This document shows positions 2,321 to 19,633 of a stretch of DNA of 20,281 bases, in pieces. Source of the stretch: Vitrella brassicaformis CCMP3155 (Eukaryota; Protista; Chromerida); NCBI GenBank assembly GCA_001179505.1, contig CDMY01000787.1, positions 1-20,281 of the forward strand, given 5' to 3'. The notes below the pieces were generated by a model. It worked only from the letters and a program-made list of their open reading frames with translations. It did not search any database and was not told the origin of the DNA. The translations under genes and the position numbers were made by a program. Position 1 is the first letter of the stretch. Every line of letters begins with the position of its first letter.

Positions 2321-3877
2321 CTAGGAGGGGTAGTAAGACTGCCCAGTGCGTCGCTCGTGCTCGCCGGGGGTCGTCTTTGCACGATACTTCCAACTCTGCT
2401 TCTTCCAGTGGTCGTCAGGCCGGCCCCCACCAGCAGCAGCAGCAGCAGCAAAGGTGTCAGTAGTCACTGGGACTGGCGGCGGGAGGCCGCCACCGCCACC
2501 GCCACCGCCACCGCCATCACCACCGCCACCGCTATCGACATGCCTCCCATAGGCATGTCGATACGCGACCGCCCCCGTCGTCGCTCCGGGCGACTGTGAC
2601 TGCGCCACCCCGGCCCCGTATGTCGCTGCTTGCTGATTATACCCAGGCGGCACTGACACACACAGACACACACAGACACACACATAGAGGGACACTGAGA
2701 GACACTGAGATAGTGGTCGACACGTACGCGACTGAGAGGTTTGAGCGTCATAGGTATGTCTTGGCTCCAAGACGCTCACGTTGGGCTGCCCCCCCGCCGC
2801 GGGATGGTGAATTACGACGGTGACATACGACTTGGACGGAGCGCCCTGGGTGCCGTAGTCCCACGCACCCGGACCCGCCCGCGGGCCGGTGTACTGGTGC
2901 GTGTGGGGGTGGGGAAGAGGAGGAGGAGGAGGAGGAGGAGGTGGCGGCTGTGGCTGTGGCTCCACATGCACACCATAGGCCGCCGGCTGGGGTGGGGGTG
3001 GGGGTGGGGGTTGGGGTGCTGGTTCGGGTGCGGGTGCGGGAGGCTGCGGATGGACCACCTGCTGTGGCTGTGGTTGTATCTGTGGCTGCGACTCGTAGGT
3101 GTAATGGTATTGGGTCTGCAGCTGTGGCTGTGGCTGTGGCTGTGGGGCAGGTTGAGAGGGGCAGCCGAACCTGATCTTCCAGGTGCTGACGTTGTTTTCG
3201 TCGTACAGCCACCACTGGTCCTTCTTGGCACAGTGGCCGCTGGCCGACGCCTTGTCCTTCCAAAACAATGCGCCGCCCCGCTTCCTCGACACCGCCGGGT
3301 AGCCTTGGAGGTCGGAGGCGTCCCGACGCTGGATGTCTCGGTTGTTGGCCTTGGTCGCCTCCTGGCACTGCGTAATATAATGGGAACCTTCTGGCATGCA
3401 CTGCCCGGTGCCGCAGCAGCAGAGGGGCCGCTTGTCGGTGCAGTCGTCGCCCTTCCGGCAGTAGCAGTCGCCCTTCTCCTCGGCAAGGCTGTACTTGGCG
3501 GGGCGGTGGCACTGGTGCGGCCACTTGCACTCGCCTTCGCACCCCTGGTTGACATCGAAGGCGTCGCAGCAGCAGGACTTGACGTGGGCGCACTGCTTCT
3601 TGAGACGGCAGAGCCTCGTGTCAGACTCTGAGCCGAAAAGGCGTGACGCCACGGAAATGGTCACTGTCTGGTTGGCCGCCGATCCACTGCAGACGTAGAC
3701 GGCCAGAGTCAGAAGCAGAAATGCTCCCAGTGAGAAGGAGAAGCCGTCAGTGACTCGCCGAGACGCTGGCCGAGACGGCCTTCTGCAATGGTGTGACGCC
3801 CCGGGGCGTGCTGAAGGGGCCGTGGGGATGGGGGGGCTGATTGGATTGGCCGTGGGTGGAAAATGGTCAGCGCTCAT
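2321..3877 (-). CDS. Putative secreted or signal-anchored Cys-rich, Pro/Gln-rich (extensin-like) protein
   Basis: 518-aa ORF with gccATG start, hydrophobic segment FSFSLGAFLLLTLAVYVC, 18 Cys in about 150 aa, then PQ/PPPP repeats and a Gly/Ala-rich tail. It contains an in-frame 75-nt intron (2727-2653, GTACGT...TGTGTCAG) that explains the VCVCVCLCV stretch. Confidence 0.75.
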   Translation of the reverse strand: MSADHFPPTANPISPPIPTAPSARPGASHHCRRPSRPASRRVTDGFSFSLGAFLLLTLAVYVCSGSAANQTVTISVASRLFGSESDTRLCRLKKQCAHVKSCCCDAFDVNQGCEGECKWPHQCHRPAKYSLAEEKGDCYCRKGDDCTDKRPLCCCGTGQCMPEGSHYITQCQEATKANNRDIQRRDASDLQGYPAVSRKRGGALFWKDKASASGHCAKKDQWWLYDENNVSTWKIRFGCPSQPAPQPQPQPQLQTQYHYTYESQPQIQPQPQQVVHPQPPAPAPEPAPQPPPPPPPQPAAYGVHVEPQPQPPPPPPPPPPLPHPHTHQYTGPRAGPGAWDYGTQGAPSKSYVTVVIHHPAAGGQPNVSVLEPRHTYDAQTSQSRTCRPLSQCLSVSLYVCVCVCLCVSVPPGYNQQAATYGAGVAQSQSPGATTGAVAYRHAYGRHVDSGGGGDGGGGGGGGGGLPPPVPVTTDTFAAAAAAGGGRPDDHWKKQSWKYRAKTTPGEHERRTGQSYYPS

Positions 3878-4396
3878 GGCTGGCAGGGTTTCTTATGATC
3901 AGTCGAACGGAAGATGCGGCGAATCGGGATGGGGGATACTGGGGGCCGGAGAGTCTCCCGTTGAACGGACTCGGATGACAGATAACGCACCAGCGGTTGG
4001 ACGGATGGGGAAACTGCCAGGCATGTGTTGTCTCTTGCCGCGGCTAATGCCGGCTGCTACCGACGCATAAAACGCAATGCCATGCAGTCTTCACACGTTC
4101 ACACCCTCACTACCTACCTACACGTGAATTGAATTGTGTAGTATCTTTACCCAGTCAGTCCTCCACCCCAGCCCCCCCCCAGCCGCCAACCCGCCCTTAA
4201 TTACACTTAGCACACATACAGACACCCACAGCTACACAAACAGACACCAACTTGAAGGAAGCTATAGACACCCACCCTCCGGTCCCTCCCTCCCTCCTTC
4301 AGGCGCAGATCCATCCATCCATCCACAGCCACACACACGAAGCCTGCCCCTCTCTCTACTCACTGCTTCCTCTTCCTCCCTCACACGATCGTGTGA

Positions 4397-6275
4397 TCAC
4401 AGCTCCTCGTGGACAAGCCGCTCGTAGTCGATCTCGTCGCCCTCACCCATATCGTCATCGTCGTCGGTCCCGTCGTCTACCACGGGATCGGGCGTCGGCG
4501 CCGGCGGCACCAACGCCGGGTCCTCCATACTCAGCTCCTTGCGCATCCCTGCACACCCACACACACACACACACACCCACACACACAGGTGCCATTCTTC
4601 TCCCTGATGGTGTTGTGGGTGATTGAGTCGGTGAAGGGGATGTGATCTTGCCTGGCAGCGGTGGCGGGTTGTACTCGTCGTAGACGGGCGGCACGTGTCC
4701 GTCGGGGTATGTGCGCACCCAGCCCTCGTCATAGGTGACGCCCTTGATGCCCAGAAGCTCGACGGTGAAGAGGAGCACCTCGTGGCCCTTGATCTTGTCG
4801 CCCTGGCCCCACTCCTCGTACCCAAGGGCTGAGGGGATGTACAGCTGCCACTTGTCGCCCACAACCATCAGCTGCAATGCCTCAGCCCTACACACACACG
4901 CCTTAGGTGTGTGTGGTGTGTGTGTGGTGGAGTGGGGGTGTTATGCCACTTACCATCCCTTGACGACGTGTGTGGTTTGGAACTCTTCGGGCTCCCCCCG
5001 GTCATAGGAGCAGTCGAACACATCGCCGTCAGTCAGTGTGCCGTTGTAATGCACCTGCAGTGGGGTGCACATCACAAACCCAGACAGACAGACAGACAGA
5101 CGCACAGACAGTCACGACAGACACACCTTGTGTTGTGTGTGCGTCGGGATGGGTGAGGGTGTGGGTGAGGTTTGGTGTGGCCTACCGACCTTGACCGTGT
5201 CGTTCTCTGATGGGCGTATGGTGCCGTTGCCCTTGTGGAGCACTTTGTACTGAAGACCACTCTCTGTCACTATGATGCCCTCCTGACCATACATACCATC
5301 ACAACCACACACAGATCAGATAAGATCACATCAGATAATAAGGGAGGGGATCACCCACTCCACTCCACTCCACTCCACTCACCTGTTGCTTATTCTCTTC
5401 CAGCCACTTTGGCCCCTCAACCTCATTCCTCTCGGACGGGGTCAGCCTGCCACCACAACACAACACAACACAACACAACACACCGAGAGGGAGGGATGGA
5501 TGGATCGCCGGCCGCCTCGTGGGTCCTCCTCAGACAAGAAGCAGATCGATGTGTGTGTGAGTGGATGTGCGTGTGGTGACGCGCACCTCACCTCCTCATG
5601 GGTTCGTCATCTTCCGGCCAGAGTGGCTGCTGCTTGCACATCTTGGGACACAACTTCTGACTTATCTGGTTAAAAAACAGACAGAGCAACACACAGAGCT
5701 CTGTATGCTCGTCGGGTCGGTGCACCGCACTGACTCCCCAACCTTGTGGTGCTCGACTTCTTGCCCCAGCAGCGCCTCAAGACCGTCCTGGTAGCCAGAG
5801 TCGTCCAACAGACGCCTGGACAACACACACACACACACACTAAGTGCTACACATCCGTCTCTCTGCCTGTGGTGTGCCGCACCTGCAGGCCTTGACCATG
5901 TCGTAGATGTGCAGGTTGTCGGCCCTCTCAGCGTACTCCTTCCAAGTGCCCCACTCGCACGCCCGCAGCCCGTCCACCCAATCAGACACCACCACATCCC
6001 TCTCGCCCTTCTTGGAACCCTCCGGCAAGTTCTCCTGACACACACACAGACACACAGACACACAGACAGACAGACAGACAGACGCCGTCAGTACAGTGCA
6101 GTGCAGTAGATCTGCTGTTTGTGTGTGTTAGTATACCCACCTTGACTCTGAGGTCTATGTGGTAGGCGATGGTCTGGCAGACCTCACAATCGAGCTCACG
6201 CGTCTGCTTCCCTCGCAGGCCGCTCACTGGAGGCCACAGAGAGGCCGCCACACACACCAGCAGACCCAACCCCAT
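4397..6275 (-). CDS. ER-luminal FKBP-type peptidyl-prolyl isomerase fused to an N-terminal saposin/canopy-like domain; C-terminal HEEL
   Basis: Exons 6275-6141, 6034-5883, 5815-5743, 5665-5592, 5446-5383, 5282-5190, 5054-4954, 4887 onward, and a last exon ending TGA 4399-4397. Signal peptide MGLGLLVCVAASLWPPVSG. Six-Cys pattern CEVC...C...KAC...LCPKMC. Mip/FkpA-type NEVEGPKWLEENKQQEGIIVTESGLQYKVLHKG. FKBP core VHYNG, VFDCS, VVKGWAEALQLM, LYIPSALGY, LLFTVELL. The junction near 4550-4670 is ambiguous. Confidence 0.9.
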
Positions 6276-6533
6276 CGCCACAAGCGCCAGATCTGAGGAA
6301 AAGACCTCTCACGCCTGCACGGGATATGCGAGCTTGGAGCCGATATGGGATGACCAAGATGGATGAGTGATTATGGGCTTGTTGGGACTCCCTGGAGCCC
6401 TTGCAGCCGAAAAATAGCGTGGATCAGCCTTTCCATGCCGTCTTCAGCCCCACTCACTCATGGCGCACTCATCGCCGACCTGTTTGAGGCCTGATCTGGC
6501 GGACAAGGAGCCTCAGCCTCTCAACTACTGATA
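6276..6533. promoter_or_regulatory. Short head-to-head intergenic region, likely a bidirectional promoter/5' UTRs
   Basis: 258 bp between divergent start codons at 6275 (-) and 6534 (+). No specific motif identified. Confidence 0.45.
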
Positions 6534-8212
6534 ATGGCCCGCAGCCGACCATTCGTGTGGCTCTCCATCCATATCCATCTGCTGCTGGCCATCTCTGCCT
6601 TTTTCACCTCAGCATCCGCTCAGCAGCCAGGCTACGGCTCCGTCTTCCCCTCCGACAGCTGCACTGCAGACGACACCAACGGCGCAGCGGCCCAGCAGCC
6701 GGACCACCTGCTCTCGTTCGATACCGTCACGCTCACGTGCATCGACTGCACCAGATACGACCCTGTGGCTGTGGCTGACGCTTCCGGAGAGGCCTGCACG
6801 TGCCCATGGGGCTATAGGGTTGTCAGAGGGTGGGCGAGGGCGCTCTCCTGTTTCCCCTGTCCGGACGGGGAGGCGCCCACACTCGACCAGAGCGAGTGCA
6901 TGGCCTGCGGCAATGGGACTGTCTATGACGCGTCTGTGAAGGAGTGCGTGTGTCCTGCCGGGGCTGTGACCATTGAGAGAGACCTGTCGTACGGGCTGCT
7001 CGAGGGGGGCAAGGCCTGCCAGCCGTGCGACGACCCTCAGAGGACATTTCCTGGGCCAACACAGCCGGCGAGAGTCTACGAGTAAGGAAGACTGGCATGC
7101 ATCCGTCCATCCATCCATCCATCCAGCCATCCACACAGACGTGGGTTTGTGTGTGTGTGTGTGTGTGTGTGGTGCAGGTGTGTGCCGTGCGGTGACGAGC
7201 ACATGGCTTATGAGCCTACCAGTGACCCGCGCCAGCCCTACCGCTGTGTGTGCGACGAGAAGGCTGGCTACCGAGCCGCCGGGGCGGGGTGTGTGGAACA
7301 AACACTCTACCAACAAGTCGATGGCACTTACCCTGTCGCTGCTGCAACCGAGGTGTGGACACACAGAGGGAGAGAGGGAGAGAGGGAGAGAGAGGTGTGC
7401 CTGTGTGGTTGTTTTGCAGGTGATCTACCGTGATTTCATCGACGACGACGATCGTCGTGAGCTGCTGCGGTCGGACACCCTGAAGCACCTCTACATCTGG
7501 TGTGCCGTGGGGTGCATCAAGAAACGCCCAGAGGACTGCCACTGCCTCGCACACCTGTGCGCCCTCCAGCTCTATGAGACACGAGCGACCGTCTGCAGAT
7601 ACCTTGACGTACACACCAACAACAGGACACCGACACACACACACAGAGAGAGAGGGAGAGGGAGGGAGAGGGACAGCTCCTCTTGCCGTGCGTGTGTGCC
7701 ACATTCATTCAGGTGTTGAACCGGAACTCGACGATGCGGGCTGGTGCGGTGGATCCTGGTCAGCTGGAGGGGCTGCCGTGGGTCTACTACCGCCGAAGCA
7801 ACGACCTGGTGCTCAAGGACAAGAGCGTCCAGTGGGAGTACTCATTCAGACACGACGTCAAGAACCAACGTCTCAGGTCAGCCACACCCGACAAATATGG
7901 ACACACTCACCTCACCCGGATGGCCGTCTCACCCACCACACAAACATCATCAGGTTTTGGCTGGCGCGTTATTCGCTAGAGGGCGAGTGGCTGGGCTGGG
8001 TGCCGCTGGGCAGCCACCTGACGCTCTGTGACGGCGGCCCCACCAGCCCGACCCAGCACAGCCCTCGCTGGACCGAATTCGGGGGCAGCTTCGAGCAGAA
8101 GTGTGAAGTGCCCCTGCAGCTCATTCTCGACTGCGGGAGGCACCCGGAGCTCTATGACCTCTTCATCGAAAACCCCAAAGGCCTGCGAGCCACACACACA
8201 GAGAGGGAGAGG

Positions 8213-8244
<32 letters not shown>

Positions 8245-10069
8245 GCCCACAAGACAAGACACCCATCCCCCTCTCTGTTGGTCGTCATGGCGCATGCAAC
8301 AGGTGAGCTGATAGCCGTGCCGGTGCGTGTGGTCAACCTGCTGGACTTCGAGGGCGAGCCTAACAAGAACAAGCGGCCGAGCGACACCGACGACGACATC
8401 CTCGTGAGGCGCTTCTTCGTGTGCGAGGCCGTCACGGGCAGAACCGGCGCAGGCGCTTACCAGTCCGCCGACGTGCCGCAGATCGTCAGATGGGCCTCCA
8501 AAATCAGCGTTGAGGTAGCCATCCATCAAGGAGAAGAAAGGAGCCGCCCAGAATCCGTCTGTCGTCTGTGTCTGTGTGTCAGATTGTGACTCAAGAGGAC
8601 AATTCCCGCAAGATCTATGTGCCGGTGGTGAACCTGGCATACAGCGAGCACCGGCTCGACGCCGCCATCTTCACCAACCAAGACGATTCATCCTCCTCAT
8701 CGTCATCGAATGGCGGGGACACCTCGGCAGCAGCAGCATCGTCCTCCTCCTCCCACCCACGAGTCACCCGCTCCACCAAACGGCTCCCCGCCGAGTTTCG
8801 CGCAGAGTTCGCCACCGACTCTGAAGAATTCTGGACGGTGTTCTCTTCCCTAACCGGTGTGGGTGGCGGCCTGGCGATGGTGCTGTGCCTCTATATCGTC
8901 ATGCAGTACTATAGGAGGAACCCTGCGGACCCCGCCGCGGGGCTGAATCCGGAGCCGGCGCAGGGCTTCTATCGCGCATTCCCGCCGGCTCTCTTGTGCT
9001 CGCTGCGGAACTTTTTCGCCTGTCTGGGGCTGTTTGTGTTTGGGTGGCTGCTGATTGTGTCATCATACTGGCTGTTCTTCTACAAACTGCAGGTGGGTGG
9101 GATGGGGGGGTGGGGGGTGGNNNNNNNNNNNNNNNNNNNNNNNNNNNNNNNNNNNNNNNNNNNNNNNNNNNNNNNNNNNNNNNNNNNNNNNNNNNNNNNN
9201 NNNNNNNNNNNNNNNNNNNNNNNNNNNNNNNNNNNNNNNNNNNNNNNNNNNNNNNNNNNNNNNNNNNNNNNNNNNNNNNNNNNNNNNNNNNNNNNNNNNN
9301 NNNNNNNNNNNNNNNNNNNNNNNNNNNNNNNNNNNNNNNNNNNNNNNNNNNNNNNNNNNNNNNNNNNNNNNNNNNNNNNNNNNNNNNNNNNNNNNNNNNN
9401 NNNNNNNNNNNNNNNNNNNNGGGTGGGGGGTGGGGATGGATGGATGGATGGGGAGTGTTGCTCGTTCTGCGGTGTGGTCAGGAGGAGCCTTATGTGTTGC
9501 TGCCGTCGGGTCTGATGGGTGGCTCTGGCCGGGCGTATCTGCCCTTTGACGTGACGCTCATCCTGGGCTACTGCTTCTGCTTCCTCGCCACCCTATTCGC
9601 CATCCTGCAACAAGTAACTCACGAACCACCCCCACCTCTACCCACATGCATTCTTTGCCTCTCTCTCCCCCTCCCACACACACATGTCAGTCTCAGGCGT
9701 TCGTGGTGGTGCTCGACCGCGAGCCGTTCCACCGCCCGGTGAGCAATGTGCCGCCGTCACCCGCAATGCGGCTCAGCACACCCATACACCCATCTCAGCA
9801 GCAGCAGCTCCCACAGCCGAGCAAGGACGAGGGGACCAGGCAGCAGCAGCAGCAGCAACAGCAACAAGTAGCAGGGGGGACCGGGGGAGTGGCTGGGGGA
9901 GGTGGTGGGGCTGATGTGGGAGGGGCCGGGAGGGGCCCTTCTGCGTGGCGGTCGCTGTTTGTGCTGAATGAGCTGAATGAGCGGCAGACCTTCACCTACA
10001 CCAACCCACAGGTCACATGGATGGCCGTCTTGTTCTTCCTTGAAGGTGCCTTTCACTCACTCACTCACT

Positions 10070-10102
<33 letters not shown>

Positions 10103-11941
10103 GAGGCCATGTGTGTGTGCGGTGTATGTGTGTGTGAGTCTGTTGTGTGTGTGTGTGCTGCACAGGTCTAGAGTGGAAGAACGCGGGCAGATGGCGGCCG
10201 CAGATGGACGACCTCAGCCACGGCAACGCGCCTTATAACCCTTTCCTACAGGCAAGACAACCACAAGAGAACCACCGCAGCAGCCACAGTGCTCCCTCCT
10301 ACCATGCCTTTCGTGTGCGTGATATGCATACAGATAGCGATAAGCGGTCTGGTGTGGGTGCTGGTGGTGCTGTTGGAGCTGGTCGGGCAGCGGCTGCTGT
10401 CGGTGATCGTGCCCAACCCCCTTGACATGCTAGTGGACCTCTGCGCCCTCTCCAACACATCGCTGCTCATACTCAACGAGCCACAGCATGGCTGGTACAC
10501 ACACACACATACAAAGAGGGAGGGAGGGACGGAGGGAGAGGGGGAGACACCGTGGGTATCTCTGCATCTCTGTCGTCTGCCTGTGTCTGTCTGTGGCTGC
10601 TCTCACACATAAACACATCAGGTACATCCACGGCGCCGCCCCCGGCGGCATCAGCGACGTCCCCACAGCCGACCTGCTGGTGTTTCTCAAGCAGGAGGGC
10701 GGCGGCCTGCTGCTGAAGCGGGGCCTGGTGCCCGACGACGCCCACCGCGCCACCCTCCAGACCTTCGAGGTCTTCCTCACTGTAGAGTTCAAGCGCTCTT
10801 TCTACTCGGTAGGGTAAAGCCCCCCCCCCCCCNNNNNNNNNNNNNNNNNNNNNNNNNNNNNNNNNNNNNNNNNNNNNNNNNNNNNNNNNNNNNNNNNNNN
10901 NNNNNNNNNNNNNNNNNNNNNNNNNNNNNNNNNNNNNNNNNNNNNNNNNNNNNNNNNNNNNNNNNNNNNNNNNNNNNNNNNNNNNNNNNNNNNNNNNNNN
11001 NNNNNNNNNNNNNNNNNNNNNNNNNNNNNNNNNNNNNNNNNNNNNNNNNNNNNNNNNNNNNNNNNNNNNNNNNNNNNNNNNNNNNNNNNNNNNNNNNNNN
11101 NNNNNNNNNNNNNNNNNNNNNNNNNNNNNNNNCCCCCCCCCCCCACACACACAACACAATTCGTTCTATTGTGTCAGGTGAGCGGCACTCTCTTCTCCCA
11201 TCGGCAGCGGCAGAAGCAGCAGAAGAAGTCGCCAGGGGCATCAGCAGCAGCGGCAGCGGCAGGAGCGTCCTCCCCCTCCCTCCCAGCCACAGAGGCCCCC
11301 CGCGCGAGAGCGTCGTCCATCCACGGGGGTGCGCCACTGGACCGTCTTTTGGCGGCGGACGACCCGGTGCGTCAGGAGCAGTGCCGGCAGGCGCTGCAGG
11401 GTTTGGTGGGGGAGACGATCGAGGATGTGGTGAACCAGCGGCTGACACAGATCCTCAAGATGACGGGCGTGCAGAAGATATGGAAACCGGCGCCAGACGT
11501 ACGTACGTTTGGATGAGTGGGTGGATGGCACACATGCTCTCTCTCTGTGTGCGTGTCTGTGTGTCTGTGTGTCTGTGTGTGTATGCAGATGCGTGTGTTC
11601 AGCATGCCCCTGTTCTACGAAGATCGGGGCGGCCGTGGGTGGACGTCCGTCCTGCTGGCGGGAGGCGAGGGTGTCTTTGTGGCGACGCAGATCCTGCAGT
11701 TCTGGGTGGTCTTCCGCTACGGCCAGTCGCCCTTCGTGGCCGCCGTGTGCAGCTACATCCTCGACCGCGTCCTCAGGTGGCTGCGGCGGTTCCTGGGCGC
11801 CAAGAACATGGTAATGAGAGAAGAAAGACGGTGTGTGTTAGTGTGTGAAGGATACGATACGTGTGTGCGTGTGGGTGGGCGTGGGTGTGGTGTGGGTTTC
11901 AGGCGTTCAAGTGCCTCCCTGATGACCGGTTCTTGCTGTAG
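6534..11941 (+). CDS. TMEM67: Meckelin (TMEM67/MKS3), ciliary transition-zone membrane protein
   Basis: Signal peptide and Cys-rich CxxC/CxC ectodomain. Meckelin-like motifs CHCLAHLCALQLY, LPWVYY, FWLARYSLEGEWLGW, LVRRFFVCEAVTG, FFYKLQ|EEPYVLLP, SAWRSLFVLNELNERQT, GWYIHG, RGLVPD..QTFEVF, LFYED..WTSVLLAGGE, RWLRRFLGAKNM. Terminal exon 11903-11941 AFKCLPDDRFLL* resembles the family ending KTLVDERFLI. Confidence 0.93.
9121..9420. other. Assembly gap (300 N) inside a meckelin intron
   Basis: N run flanked by G-rich sequence. The flanking exons join in frame (YKLQ|EEPY). Confidence 0.97.
10046..10165 (+). repeat. Intronic compound microsatellite (CACT)n-(CA)n-(GA)n-(TG)n, representative of many introns in the window
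   Basis: Read directly. The intron runs GTGCC...CACAG between exons LFFLEG and LEWKNAG. Confidence 0.9.
10833..11131. other. Assembly gap (299 N) inside a meckelin intron
   Basis: N run flanked by poly-C on both sides. The flanking exons join in frame (RSFYS|VSGT). Confidence 0.97.
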
Positions 11942-12210
11942 GGGAGGGAGGGAGGGGAGGGGAGCGTTAGATGGTCTGGTTGGTGCGTCCACACGCGTGT
12001 TCATAACAATCAATCGTGTCTGTCTGTCCATCGTGTGTGTGTGTATACGTATCGTTGAGTGTATAGACCCTGTCCGTCCATGCGTTGGGTTCATGTACAC
12101 AAACAAATGTCCGCATACTCACTCACTGGCCACCCACCAATCATGTCATGAACCAACCTCCCTTAGTCGGATCGACAGACAGACAGTAAACCGGTCACTC
12201 ATCGGATTAA

Positions 12211-13996
12211 TCAATCAGTCAAATCAATGCACTCCTGCCCTGCAGCATCGGCACTTTGACCACTTGCCGATGGCCCGCCACCACCACCGCCAGCAGCAAC
12301 AGCAGCGGCACCGCCACCAGCCGTCGGTCTCAGCTGCACGACGAGTGGGCAGTGGTCGCTGCCCATGAAGCCCTCCATTCCGCCCCTCGCCGTCCCCTTG
12401 CCCGTGATGCGCACACTCTCCACCCGACCCATAAGTGATTCCGACACCAACTGCAGCCAGCCACCACACGCACACACATGGACAACGGCTCGGTGTGCGA
12501 ATGTGTGTGTGTGTGTGTGTGTGTTCGTACGATGTGGTCGATCCTCATGCCCTTGTTGGCGTATTTGCCCCACCCCCGCCACGAGAAGCACGGCGACTCC
12601 GCAGACGGGGCGCCGCGCGGGTGCATCTGCCGATAGGCGTCCACCTGACACACACCACCCCACCCCTCGCCCATCCATGCCATGCGGCCACCCATTCGTG
12701 TCGTGTGTGTAGTTGCCGTCATTCGCTCACGAGGCTGCCGGCCTTGAGGATCTCCCGGAAGTCCGCCCGTTCGCCGTCGGTGCAGCCCGGCTGACCCACA
12801 TACTTCGGCGGCGGCCTGGCCGGCCCCTCTGTCTGCTGCCGAAACCACCTCTCGTCACCAGGGGACAGATCGAGATCAGTGGCCGCACAGTTGAGGTCGC
12901 CTGCGATGATGAGGGGCTTGCCGCTGCTGGTGGGAGGGGCGTCGCTGCTGCTGGCCTCTCCTGCTGACGTGCTGTCAGTGGTGAAGTGCTTGACGAACTG
13001 CTGGACGTCCGTGTCGAACCGGTGCCGCCGTGAGAACTTCTCCGTCTGCCAACCTGACACACCAAACCAAACCTGGATGGATGGACGGTTGACGCCTTCT
13101 TGTGGCGCGGGTACCGTTGTTCGGCGTATACCTGATGGGACACACACAGGCAGGCAGGCAGGCAGACACAGACACGATATAAGGTGGCTCATGTGTGTGA
13201 GCGTAGCTGTTTTCCGACTGACATACACACATGTTCATGACGGCGAAGCTCTCGAACTCCGCCAGGATGACGCGGCCCTCCTCGTGGTGCACTGACTGCA
13301 GCTTGTCCGGCAACAACAGGCTGTACCGCACAGACCGCACGTGGATGTCCTTCCTTGCCATCATCAAACAGCCTGCACCACCACCACACACCACACACCA
13401 CACGCACATCCATCCATCCATCCATTCATTCAAGGCTTTTCCATGCCTGCATATCGCCAGTCGGCAAGTGACCAAAAGAGGCTGTAGGAGGACAGCACCG
13501 GGCTGCTCTTGAAGGCTCTGTTGACCCGGTCGGCGTCCTCTCGGGTGGATGCGTCGTTGTCCCGCAGCTGGCCTCGGTCCCGTGGCCGCCCATCGCCCTT
13601 CTTGGCACCTGCATGCATCGGCACAGGGGACACCCGGCCGACCTCTCACCAATTGCCGCATTGTGCGAATCTCTTCTGGTCTTGCACGCCCACCTGGGGG
13701 AGCCGCGGCGCAGAGTTTGATCTCTTGCAGACACACGACATCCTGCAGCAAAGCGGCACACACACACACAGGGCAGGATACACACATGTTCAGATCTCTT
13801 GAAAGCTTCTCTGTTTGGCACATGTGGACGATACCGGCTTCTCTGTTTCCATGAAGCTCTCGAAATCCTTCCACTGCTTGTGGTCCTTGATGCGTGTGGT
13901 GAGGCCGTTGACGTTCCACGTCACGATCTTCAGCGGATCTGACCGCTTGACCCTCTTCTCTGCTGCCGCCGAGGCTGCCTCGGGTAGACGCTTCAT
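12211..13996 (-). CDS. Exonuclease III / AP endonuclease (EEP fold), APE1L-type
   Basis: Spliced motifs IVTWNVNG, DVVCLQEIK, FWSLADWRYAG, EGRVILAEFESF, YTPNNGW, LIIAGDLN, GQPGCTDGER, VDAYRQMH, GKYANKGMRIDH, EGFMGSDHCP. These closely parallel Arabidopsis APE1L motifs as recalled (WWSLADSKYAG, DGRVILAEFETF, YSPNNGW, GQPGFTPSER, EGFHGSDHCP). ATG 13996, stop 12213-12211. Confidence 0.94.
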
Positions 13997-18909: not shown

Positions 18910-19461
18910 TCAGTCGGCTTCATGGCCGCCCAGGAAGTGCTCAAACACGGCCGATCCGATGCCAAAGGCAGCACACCCTCCGAGCATCGCCCCCGGACCA
19001 GACTTATACGCCAGGGCCGCCCCTGTGGCACATCCCGCATACACAGAGTTGTTGATGTCGTGGGCTGCCCGCCCCTTCTCGATGAAGCACTCCACCAGGG
19101 AGAAGATGAACCCAATCTTCGCAAACGACTTGGCCGACTGCACCACCTCTGGAATGAACCCCTTGTAGGACTGCTTGATCTGCTGCCACATGGGGAGCGT
19201 CGTGTCGATGTCAACAGGCCTCATTGTGAAGAAGAAACCGCCGAACAGCAACCCCAGTCCGCCGCCCGCAATACCCATGAGGCAAGAGCGTGACAGGCAC
19301 CCCTCAGTGAAGAACTGCTGCACCTTCAGAGGGTTGATGGGCGGGATCTCGTCGCCGAAGGGGTTCTTGATGAGCCGCAGGGACGTGTAGCGGTCAGAAA
19401 GGAGGACGTCCATGAAGGAAGAGAGAGGACGAGCGGCGGCTTGAGCAGACTGAGGCTCCAT
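18910..19461 (-). CDS. TIM22: Mitochondrial inner membrane translocase subunit Tim22 (Tim17/22/23 family), intronless
   Basis: FTEGCLSRSCLMGIAGGGLGLLFGGFF, SAKSFAKIGFIFSLVECFIEKGRAAHDINNSVYAGCATGAALA, and GPGAMLGGCAAFG. The two Cys positions typical of Tim22 (EGC, VEC) are present. The start could be 19461, 19413 or an upstream in-frame ATG at 19587. Confidence 0.9.
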   Translation of the reverse strand: MEPQSAQAAARPLSSFMDVLLSDRYTSLRLIKNPFGDEIPPINPLKVQQFFTEGCLSRSCLMGIAGGGLGLLFGGFFFTMRPVDIDTTLPMWQQIKQSYKGFIPEVVQSAKSFAKIGFIFSLVECFIEKGRAAHDINNSVYAGCATGAALAYKSGPGAMLGGCAAFGIGSAVFEHFLGGHEAD

Positions 19462-19553
19462 CGGCCAATCAACCTTGCAGATCTGAAGATGCCCAGTCGC
19501 GATGGAAGGGATGGATGCGGCAGACGTCCTGCGACTCCTGCTTTCAACGCGCC

Positions 19554-19633
19554 GGCCCCATGGCCGAGTGGTTCGCCACGGAGTCATGTGAGCCGGTCAC
19601 CATGGGTTCAATTCCTCCAGTGGACCCATGGTG
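19554..19633 (+). pseudogene. Degenerate tRNA-like sequence / Pol III type-2 promoter (A box + B box)
   Basis: A box TGGCCGAGTGG 19561-19571 and B box GGTTCAATTCC 19605-19615. T8-to-T54 equivalent spacing is 46 nt, as in tRNA. Acceptor, D and anticodon stems pair poorly. Confidence 0.5.

What the first reader, a model, noticed from the sequence alone, without database searches (positions are those of the whole stretch)
4397..6275. Saposin/canopy-like domain fused to a Mip-type FKBP with an ER-retention signal
Seen only after splicing about 9-10 exons: signal peptide, six-Cys saposin-type pattern (CEVC/C/KAC/LCPKMC), bacterial Mip/FkpA-like pre-FKBP segment, FKBP domain retaining the active-site equivalents (Y in VHYNG, FD in VFDCS, W in KGW, Y in LGY, F in LLF), acidic tail, HEEL*. 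Known: canopy (CNPY) proteins are ER saposin-like proteins with KDEL-like tails, CNPY3 is a GRP94 co-chaperone, and ER FKBPs normally carry EF-hands or repeated FKBP domains. I do not know this combination as a described architecture. Inference: a single-chain ER foldase coupling client or Hsp90 binding to prolyl isomerisation.
Basis: partly seen in the sequence, partly recalled or inferred. Interest (0 to 1): 0.75.

Follow-up and report, generated by a model that had tools for sequence, protein, structure and literature searches.

The report
ER FKBP with extra cysteine-rich domain
This is a real, expressed nine-exon gene of the alga Vitrella brassicaformis for a protein-folding enzyme (a Mip-type FKBP) kept in the endoplasmic reticulum. 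It carries an extra six-cysteine helical front domain seen in no other organism searched, and that domain resembles the canopy/saposin family only weakly.

Summary
A minus-strand gene of nine exons (6275..4397, 359 codons) is matched block for block by two public transcript contigs and equals public protein CEM33532.1 of Vitrella brassicaformis.

**FKBP half.** It is solid and Mip-type:
- Pfam FKBP_C scores 4.6e-26.
- The last third of FKBP_N scores 3.4e-8.
- Legionella Mip is the best solved relative (1.7e-34).
- Nearly all residues invariant in 36 Mip-like relatives are kept.

**ER residence.** The signal peptide, acidic tail and HEEL end fit it. HEEL is the documented retention signal of FKBP65, and the alga's own GRP94-like HSP90 ends in HDEL.

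**Front domain (residues 20-135).** It has six cysteines in saposin order and is predicted helical. Its only family hit is a sub-threshold one to DUF3456, the canopy/MZB1/CRELD domain (E 0.02-0.06; 14-15.6 bits against a cut-off of 21.1). No relative turned up in any search, and the structure models were unusable. "Canopy-like" is therefore plausible, not shown. A diverged Mip dimerisation domain was tested and not supported.

**Closest FKBP kin.** These are protist proteins built as signal peptide, short helix, FKBP and xEL tail, without this domain. It therefore looks like a lineage-specific addition.

The verdict is a new variant of a known kind, of moderate interest. The proposed GRP94 coupling is untested.

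The parts
4209..6315 (-). Transcribed region of the gene (5' UTR, nine exons, eight introns, 3' UTR)
   Evidence: Transcript contigs L003 and L004 align from 6315/6312 down to 4271/4209 in nine 100%-identical blocks.
6141..6275 (-). Exon 1 (residues 1-45): signal peptide and start of the Cys-rich domain, including C30-x2-C33
5883..6034 (-). Exon 2 (residues 46-96): Cys-rich domain with C71 and C95
   Evidence: It is single-copy in the genome.
5743..5815 (-). Exon 3 (residues 96-120): Cys-rich domain
5592..5665 (-). Exon 4 (residues 121-145): end of the Cys-rich domain (C126-x3-C130) and linker
5383..5446 (-). Exon 5 (residues 145-166): remnant of the Mip-type connecting helix (WLEENK)
5190..5282 (-). 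Exon 6 (residues 167-197): end of FKBP_N and first strands of the FKBP domain
4954..5054 (-). Exon 7 (residues 198-231): FKBP domain (VHY, FD, KGW)
   Evidence: FKBP_C 4.1e-6, profile 13-47
4652..4887 (-). Exon 8 (residues 231-310): rest of the FKBP domain (LGY, LLF) and Pro/Tyr-rich extension. It is followed by the GC-AG intron.
   Evidence: FKBP_C 2.2e-9, profile 50-94..
4397..4548 (-). Exon 9 (residues 310-359 plus stop): proline-rich and acidic tail, HEEL, TGA
6219..6275 (-). Predicted signal peptide (residues 1-19)
   Evidence: Hydropathy about 2.5 over residues 1-14, with V-S-G at positions -3 to -1. The cleavage site is inferred.
5621..6218 (-). Six-cysteine helical front domain (residues 20-135, interrupted by introns 1-3)
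   Evidence: Cys at 30, 33, 71, 95, 126 and 130. Five helices are predicted at low confidence. No relatives were found.
5639..5911 (-). Stretch with the sub-threshold DUF3456 (canopy family) match (residues 87-129, interrupted by introns 2-3)
   Evidence: E 0.022-0.064, 14.1-15.6 bits, profile positions 104-146 of 150
5241..5442 (-). FKBP_N remnant (residues 147-180, interrupted by intron 5)
   Evidence: 3.4e-8, profile positions 64-97 of 97
4752..5219 (-). FKBP_C catalytic domain (residues 188-276, interrupted by introns 6-7)
   Evidence: 4.6e-26. Legionella Mip 1.7e-34 to 2e-35.
4400..4411 (-). C-terminal HEEL, a KDEL-type ER retrieval signal
   Evidence: Read directly in the sequence. HEEL is cited as the ER retention sequence of FKBP65.

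Best explanation
The gene encodes a soluble FKBP-type prolyl isomerase of the Mip/FkpA/FklB subfamily that resides in the ER lumen.

**Route and retention.** A signal peptide takes it into the ER. The C-terminal HEEL is read by the KDEL receptor and keeps it there. The Pro/Asp/Glu-rich tail resembles the acidic tails of other ER residents.

**Family.** It belongs to a group of protist proteins built as signal peptide, short FLEENK helix, FKBP domain, C-terminal extension and xEL tail.

**What is particular to Vitrella.** About 115 residues lie between the signal peptide and that helix. They form a helical domain with six cysteines, presumably three disulfides, in the order CxxC...C...C...CxxxC. 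It is most probably a very divergent DUF3456/SAPLIP (canopy, MZB1, CRELD WE-domain) module.

**Proposed role.** The domain sits where bacterial Mip and FkpA carry their dimerisation and chaperone domain. By analogy it would hold a client or partner protein while the FKBP domain isomerises prolyl bonds.

**Shown:** the gene structure, the single transcript, the FKBP identity with conserved pocket residues, the HEEL tail, and the absence of detectable relatives of the front domain.

**Inferred:** ER residence, disulfide bonding, the SAPLIP fold, and the binding role.
For: - Transcript contigs match all nine exons, and the product is public protein P0151 of Vitrella brassicaformis.
- Pfam gives FKBP_C 4.6e-26 and FKBP_N 3.4e-8.
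- The best solved relatives are Legionella Mip (1.7e-34), T. cruzi MIP (2e-26) and FkpA (6e-22).
- Read, all but two of the columns invariant in the FKBP part and connecting helix of 36 Mip-like proteins are kept. The exceptions are Ser to Cys212 and one Gly to Glu.
- In the tree, Vitrella sits on the same side of a branch as the xEL-tailed proteins, one of them dinoflagellate, against 57 bacterial-type rows (SH-aLRT 86). Those relatives have no front domain.
- HEEL is a documented ER retention signal, and Vitrella's GRP94-like HSP90 ends in HDEL.
- DUF3456 is the only family that recurs when the front domain is scanned alone. It appears in four ranges at E 0.022-0.064.
- DUF3456 proteins are ER-lumenal six-Cys saposin-type folds with a redox-inactive CxxC. 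The domain also occurs as an N-terminal module of a multidomain ER protein, CRELD.
Against: - The DUF3456 match is below Pfam's cut-off, covers only profile positions 104-146, disappears in the whole-protein scan and in a 61-residue fragment, and may be driven by two aligned cysteines.
- SapB_1 and SapB_2 never appeared among the Pfam hits of the front domain.
- No canopy or saposin chain appears in the PDB sequence search.
- The structural neighbours of the ESM Atlas model are unrelated helical proteins with TM at or below 0.54.
- AlphaFold models have pLDDT 39 and 46, so their fold searches are meaningless.
- The Cys spacing (37, 23, 30 and 3 residues) matches neither saposins nor canopies, as far as I recall their spacings.
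- ER residence has not been tested experimentally.
Confidence: 0.55

Rival explanations
1. The front domain is an orphan, lineage-specific disulfide-bonded helical domain unrelated to saposins or canopies. The DUF3456 hit is a chance or cysteine-driven match. The protein is still an ER Mip-type FKBP, and the role of the extra domain is unknown (binding or oligomerisation).
For: No relative of the domain was found:
- in 5.8 billion protein clusters by word search, over candidate lengths 72-628 aa
- in JGI metagenome contigs
- in the alga's own genome
- in PDB sequences
- in the ESM Atlas

The DUF3456 score is below the curated cut-off.
Against: Of 24,736 Pfam families, the only one that recurs is the ER-lumenal six-Cys family that fits the signal peptide, the xxEL tail, the CxxC start and the helical prediction. 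The hit is stable across four sub-ranges.
Confidence: 0.28
2. The front domain is the strongly diverged N-terminal dimerisation/chaperone domain of a full-length bacterial-type Mip/FkpA, with an insertion and added cysteines. There would then be no domain fusion at all.
For: - The domain sits where Mip and FkpA carry FKBP_N.
- BLASTP with Bacteroidota FKBP P0246 runs through it and puts 'TIAYHIDLRVKENL' on the 'SVSYAIGMDVARNV' motif.
- HMM and hhalign choose the same register.
- The FKBP domain is 55-61% identical to bacterial full-length proteins.
Against: - The match is not significant. An HMM of 124 Mip N-terminal parts against residues 20-146 gives E 0.28 for a single target.
- hhalign gives probability 0.4% and E 0.17.
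- The Pfam FKBP_N hit stops at profile position 64.
- About 60 extra residues would be needed.
- The tree places Vitrella with protist proteins that lack any N-domain.
Confidence: 0.12
3. The protein is not retained in the ER. It travels onward, either secreted like T. cruzi MIP or routed to the complex plastid or another compartment. HEEL would then be non-functional in this organism.
For: The signal peptide alone only shows entry into the secretory pathway. The one other Vitrella ER-type tail I read is HDEL, not HEEL. Mip-type FKBPs of trypanosomes are secreted (from my own knowledge, and the name of 1jvw).
Against: - HEEL is an accepted KDEL-type signal.
- Related protist FKBPs end in KEEL, KDEL, HDEL, EEEL or REEL.
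- No transit-peptide-like stretch follows the signal peptide. The folded Cys domain starts about ten residues after the predicted cleavage site.
- The acidic tail is typical of ER residents.
Confidence: 0.08

Closest known systems
Bacterial Mip / FkpA / FklB FKBPs (Legionella pneumophila Mip, PDB 1fd9/2uz5; E. coli FkpA 1q6u)
   Same: - FKBP domain plus the end of the long connecting helix: E 1.7e-34 over residues 149-279.
- 55-61% identity to Bacteroidota and Verrucomicrobiota homologues.
- Pocket residues kept.
- Two-module logic: an N-terminal module joined by a helix to the PPIase.
   Different: - FKBP_N positions 1-63 (the dimerisation helices) are not detectable.
- The N-terminal module carries six cysteines.
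- A eukaryotic signal peptide replaces the lipobox or periplasmic leader.
- It has an acidic tail and HEEL.
- The gene has eight spliceosomal introns.
Protist ER-type Mip-like FKBPs with xEL tails (unnamed transcript-derived proteins such as P0062, P0036, P0078, P0217 and dinoflagellate P0136) and T. cruzi MIP (1jvw)
   Same: - Signal peptide, FLEENK-type helix, Mip-type FKBP, C-terminal extension (poly-acidic in P0062) and a KDEL-like end.
- Same side of the tree.
   Different: In those proteins the signal peptide runs straight into the FLEENK helix. None has the roughly 115-residue Cys-rich domain.
Canopy / MZB1 (pERp1) / CRELD WE domain = Pfam DUF3456 (SAPLIP superfamily)
   Same: - ER-lumenal, with signal peptide and KDEL-like tail.
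- Six cysteines beginning with a CxxC.
- Helical.
- A weak DUF3456 match at residues 87-129.
- In CRELD the domain is likewise the N-terminal module of a multidomain ER protein.
   Different: - The score is below the family cut-off.
- The N-terminal two thirds are unmatched.
- The last pair is CxxxC.
- The spacings are shorter than I recall for canopies.
- No FKBP fusion is reported for this family.
Animal ER FKBPs (FKBP2/13, FKBP7, FKBP9, FKBP10/65, FKBP14)
   Same: Signal peptide, FKBP domain(s) and an H/K-D/E-EL tail. FKBP65 ends in the identical HEEL.
   Different: The FKBP domain here is of the Mip subtype. There is no EF-hand and no repeated FKBP domain.

Membership tests
FKBP-type PPIase, Mip/FkpA/FklB subfamily | FKBP_C domain above Pfam's gathering score | tested here: met
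   91.4 bits against a cut-off of 21.1, E 4.6e-26. Exons 7 and 8 also pass separately.
FKBP-type PPIase, Mip/FkpA/FklB subfamily | Conserved pocket and catalytic residues (Tyr of VHY, Phe-Asp, Trp, Tyr of LGY, Phe of LLF) | tested here: met
   Alignments to Legionella Mip and to P0246, read against the invariant columns of 36 homologues. The only changes are Ser to Cys212 and Gly to Glu after the LGY Tyr.
FKBP-type PPIase, Mip/FkpA/FklB subfamily | Connecting helix before the FKBP domain (C-terminal part of FKBP_N) | tested here: met
   FKBP_N scores 34.7 bits against a cut-off of 22, profile positions 64-97. The Mip alignment starts at residue 149.
FKBP-type PPIase, Mip/FkpA/FklB subfamily | N-terminal dimerisation helices (FKBP_N positions 1-63, SYAIG motif) | tested here: not met
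   HMM of 124 N-terminal parts: E 0.28. hhalign: probability 0.4%. Only a non-significant 'AYHID' against 'SYAIG' register appears.
FKBP-type PPIase, Mip/FkpA/FklB subfamily | PPIase activity inhibited by FK506 or rapamycin | not testable with these tools
   Needs recombinant protein.
Canopy / MZB1 / CRELD-WE (Pfam DUF3456, SAPLIP) | Match to PF11938 above the gathering score | tested here: not met
   14.1-15.6 bits against 21.1, E 0.022-0.064, profile positions 104-146 only. No hit in the whole-protein scan or exon by exon.
Canopy / MZB1 / CRELD-WE (Pfam DUF3456, SAPLIP) | Six-cysteine signature starting with CxxC | tested here: met
   Cys at 30, 33, 71, 95, 126 and 130. Number and order fit the signature described. 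The spacing differs and the last pair is CxxxC.
Canopy / MZB1 / CRELD-WE (Pfam DUF3456, SAPLIP) | Saposin-type helical fold with three disulfides | tested here: inconclusive
   AF2 single-sequence models have pLDDT 39.4 and 45.8. Foldseek best E is 1.2 and the best VIA Z is 4.7. Atlas neighbours are unrelated.
Canopy / MZB1 / CRELD-WE (Pfam DUF3456, SAPLIP) | ER-lumenal: signal peptide plus KDEL-like tail | tested here: met
   Sequence features only. In this protein the tail lies after the FKBP domain.
Canopy / MZB1 / CRELD-WE (Pfam DUF3456, SAPLIP) | Binding to GRP94 or clients | not testable with these tools
   Only the presence of a GRP94-like HSP90 with HDEL in the genome was shown.
Classical saposin B-type domains (SapB_1/SapB_2) | Pfam SapB_1 or SapB_2 match | tested here: not met
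   Neither family appeared in any Pfam scan of the protein at E up to 10. Neither was detected exon-wise anywhere in the genome.
Animal-type ER FKBPs (FKBP7/9/10/14) | EF-hand motifs or tandem FKBP domains | tested here: not met
   One FKBP_C stretch and no EF-hand family in Pfam.

The most novel reading that the evidence does not exclude
The front domain is a true, very divergent canopy/MZB1-type SAPLIP domain. The protein would then be a natural single-chain fusion of a GRP94- or client-binding co-chaperone module with a Mip-type prolyl isomerase. That would be canopy-type ER chaperoning in an alveolate alga, physically coupled to prolyl isomerisation.
Probability: 0.25. Interest if true: 0.55.

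Novelty: new variant of a known kind. Interest (0 to 1): 0.38.

Why it matters
ER FKBPs and canopy/MZB1 co-chaperones are both poorly understood helpers of secretory-protein folding. A natural fusion would argue that the two activities work on the same clients, and it would give a compact model for testing that. It also shows how a bacterial-type Mip FKBP, after losing its own chaperone/dimerisation domain in protists, can gain a different front module by exon addition. The weight of the finding is limited: the domain's identity is unproven, and the fusion is seen in one species only.

Tried and rejected
**Handling of the spliced model.** The joined product was used only as public protein ids (P0001, P0151) and as the natural transcript contigs L003 and L004.

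**Searches that found nothing useful**
- Exon-wise Pfam found only the FKBP pieces.
- Word searches for relatives of the front domain, at two length ranges, were blank.
- The whole-protein word search gave only FKBP-part relatives.
- Two metagenome pattern scans gave no relative, or only FKBP-part relatives.
- The ESM Atlas gave nothing usable.
- PDB sequence searches of the front domain gave only chance hits, such as caspase-2 at E 0.6.
- DUF3456, SapB_1 and SapB_2 searched in the alga's own genome found nothing. Exon splitting makes this weak evidence.

**Structure modelling**
- The second, on the front domain alone, was no better (pLDDT 46).
- Foldseek and VIA searches with that model are meaningless.

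**Ideas tested and rejected**
- A diverged FKBP_N origin of the front domain was not supported.
- A gene-model chimera of two genes is rejected by the transcripts.
- Membership in the degenerate FKBP-like exon cassette family noted elsewhere in this genome is rejected. This FKBP is canonical, split over three exons, and its exon 8 is single-copy.

**Choice I would change.** I used the one exhaustive HMMER job on exon 8, to obtain the protein id, rather than on the front domain. Remote relatives of the front domain were therefore not sought without a word index.
Full report
**What is in the sequence**

Reading 6500..4200 on the minus strand and checking frames by script gives a nine-exon gene. 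The exons are 6275-6141, 6034-5883, 5815-5743, 5665-5592, 5446-5383, 5282-5190, 5054-4954, 4887-4652 and 4548-4397. They total 1080 nt, or 359 codons plus TGA. Seven introns are GT-AG. Intron 8 has a GC donor (gcaag). The introns are full of microsatellites.

Exon-wise Pfam finds FKBP_C on exon 7 (4.1e-6, profile 13-47) and on exon 8 (2.2e-9, profile 50-94). It finds the end of FKBP_N on exon 6 (0.025) and nothing on exons 1-5 or 9. NCBIfam agrees on a bacterial-type FKBP.

**Organism and transcript evidence**

The assembly has 72.7 Mb in 1064 contigs. Earlier notes of this scan name it Vitrella brassicaformis. The exhaustive HMMER search with exon 8 returned a 353-residue protein, P0001, at 100% identity.

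Its cluster mate P0151 has 359 residues. It is CEM33532.1 / A0A0G4GSE3, "peptidylprolyl isomerase" of Vitrella brassicaformis CCMP3155. It lies on a 20281-base contig and also matches an MMETSP transcript flagged complete. P0001 is my nine-exon product minus the first six residues.

Both proteins lie on short JGI contigs, L003 (1246 nt) and L004 (1305 nt). These contigs have no introns. They align to the window in exactly nine 100%-identical blocks at my exon borders, from 6315 to 4209. One mRNA therefore carries both halves, and the GC-AG intron is real. From here on I used P0151 and sub-ranges of L004 as references.

**The FKBP half**

- On the whole protein, Pfam gives FKBP_C at 4.6e-26 and FKBP_N at 3.4e-8. 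The FKBP_N match covers only profile positions 64-97.
- The best solved relatives are Legionella Mip (1.7e-34, residues 149-279), T. cruzi MIP (2e-26) and E. coli FkpA (6e-22). They rank ahead of FKBP12, FKBP51 and FKBP2.
- The region is 55-61% identical to bacterial Mip/FklB proteins over about 130 residues.
- Read against the invariant columns of 36 such proteins through the pairwise alignment, Vitrella keeps GLQY, VHY, FD, R, GW, E, L, M, P, the LGY Tyr and the LLF-region residues. It changes only a Ser to Cys212 and a Gly to Glu.

"Mip-type FKBP with an intact pocket" is confirmed at the sequence level.

**ER residence (inferred)**

- Residues 1-14 are strongly hydrophobic, with V-S-G before residue 20.
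- The last 80 residues hold 14 Asp, 9 Glu and 13 Pro and end in HEEL.
- HEEL is cited as the ER retention sequence of FKBP65 (PMC2132569).
- In Vitrella, one of four HSP90 loci ends in an acidic tail plus HDEL, as GRP94 does. Another ends in MEEVD, the cytosolic form.

**Nearest kin and the origin of the front domain**

Eighteen of the fetched relatives end in K/H/R/E-D/E-EL. Those compared with Vitrella are built as signal peptide, "GTN.EGLKFLEENK" helix, FKBP domain, C-terminal extension (poly-acidic in P0062) and xEL tail. One of them is from a dinoflagellate.

In a quick maximum-likelihood tree, Vitrella lies on a long branch. It falls on the same side of a branch as these proteins, against 57 bacterial-type rows (SH-aLRT 86, not decisive). 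None of them has anything between the signal peptide and the helix. No fetched relative resembles the Vitrella front domain. The simplest history is a protist ER Mip-like FKBP that gained exons for about 115 residues in the Vitrella lineage.

**The front domain (residues 20-135)**

It has six cysteines, at 30, 33, 71, 95, 126 and 130. This is the order CxxC...C...C...CxxxC. Five helices are predicted, at low confidence.

No relative was found anywhere:
- word searches over candidate lengths 197-628 and 72-229 aa
- metagenome scans
- the alga's own genome, where exon 2 is single-copy
- PDB sequences
- the ESM Atlas

Scanned alone, by reference to the transcript, the domain gives one recurring Pfam hit: DUF3456, the canopy/MZB1/CRELD-WE family. 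Residues 87-129 match profile positions 104-146 of 150, at E 0.022-0.064 and 14.1-15.6 bits, in four different sub-ranges. This is below the 21.1-bit cut-off. The hit is absent from the whole-protein scan, from the N-terminal half alone and from a 61-residue fragment.

The literature describes this family as ER-lumenal six-cysteine SAPLIP domains. It reports a saposin-type fold with a redox-inactive CxxC in MZB1. In CRELD proteins the same domain is the N-terminal module of a multidomain ER protein with a KDEL isoform. The context therefore fits well. Still, the sequence evidence is sub-threshold, and it rests partly on the same cysteines that prompted the idea.

Both AlphaFold jobs, run without homologues, gave unusable models (pLDDT 39.4 and 45.8). 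The fold searches on them are noise. I put the chance of a saposin/canopy-type fold at roughly 55-60%.

**The rival I raised myself**

BLASTP with a Bacteroidota FKBP ran through the front domain. It laid "TIAYHIDLRVKENL" on the "SVSYAIGMDVARNV" start of the Mip dimerisation domain. Two tests followed:
- an HMM of 124 Mip N-terminal parts against residues 20-146 scored E 0.28 for a single target
- hhalign of a 36-sequence alignment against the domain gave probability 0.4% and E 0.17

The register repeats but is not significant, and the protist kin lack the domain. I keep this reading at about 12%.

**Mechanism**

Most likely this is an ER-lumenal prolyl isomerase whose catalytic domain is tethered by a short helix to a disulfide-stabilised helical module. 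That module would bind clients or a partner chaperone. The layout is analogous to Mip, FkpA, trigger factor or SurA, here with a SAPLIP-like module in place of the bacterial one. A link to GRP94 is possible, since the gene exists, but nothing here tests it.

**Novelty**

The protein is already in public databases, annotated only as a peptidylprolyl isomerase. The front domain is unannotated. The combination was found in no other sequence and in no paper of the library. I class it as a new variant of a known kind, an ER FKBP with a lineage-specific and possibly canopy-like front module. Interest is moderate and depends on proving the domain's fold.

Noticed in passing
window 6534-12368 (+): A multi-exon Meckelin/TMEM67 homologue lies head to head with the FKBP gene. 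Three ORF pieces hit Pfam Meckelin: 7505-8311 (profile 125-229), 8571-9515 (profile 302-423) and 11520-12368 (profile 743-814). Only about 220 bases separate the FKBP transcript start (6315) from the first plus-strand ORF (6534), so the two genes may share a promoter region.
   Followed up: partly
window 18913-19587 (-): An ORF with a Tim17/Tim22/Tim23/Pmp24 family domain, 4e-22.
   Followed up: partly
window 2321-3877 (-): A 518-residue uninterrupted ORF lies directly downstream of the FKBP gene on the same strand. It has no family match apart from a weak, probably compositional Chorion_2 hit. Its function is unknown and I did not check whether it is expressed.
   Followed up: no
window 4549-6140, introns of the FKBP gene: The introns consist largely of microsatellites such as (TG)n, (CTGT)n, (GGAGT)n and (TGTTG)n. 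Intron 8 (4651-4549) uses a GC-AG splice pair, confirmed by two transcripts.
   Followed up: yes
G000:C185 about 11100-13440 (-), locus L014; G000:C270 about 32800-35100 (+), locus L010: Vitrella has a GRP94-like HSP90 whose acidic tail ends in HDEL, and a cytosolic HSP90 ending in MEEVD. Two further HSP90 loci lie on C396 and C450.
   Followed up: partly
proteins P0062, P0036, P0078, P0081, P0136, P0217, P0232: A group of marine-protist, transcript-derived Mip-type FKBPs carry a signal peptide and KDEL-like tails (KEEL, KDEL, EEEL, REEL). One is from a dinoflagellate. None carries a name beyond generic FKBP labels, so they may be an under-described ER Mip-like FKBP family of eukaryotes.
   Followed up: partly
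window 9001-10000: GC content falls to 0.43 against about 0.58 elsewhere, inside the Meckelin gene region. I did not examine this further.
   Followed up: no
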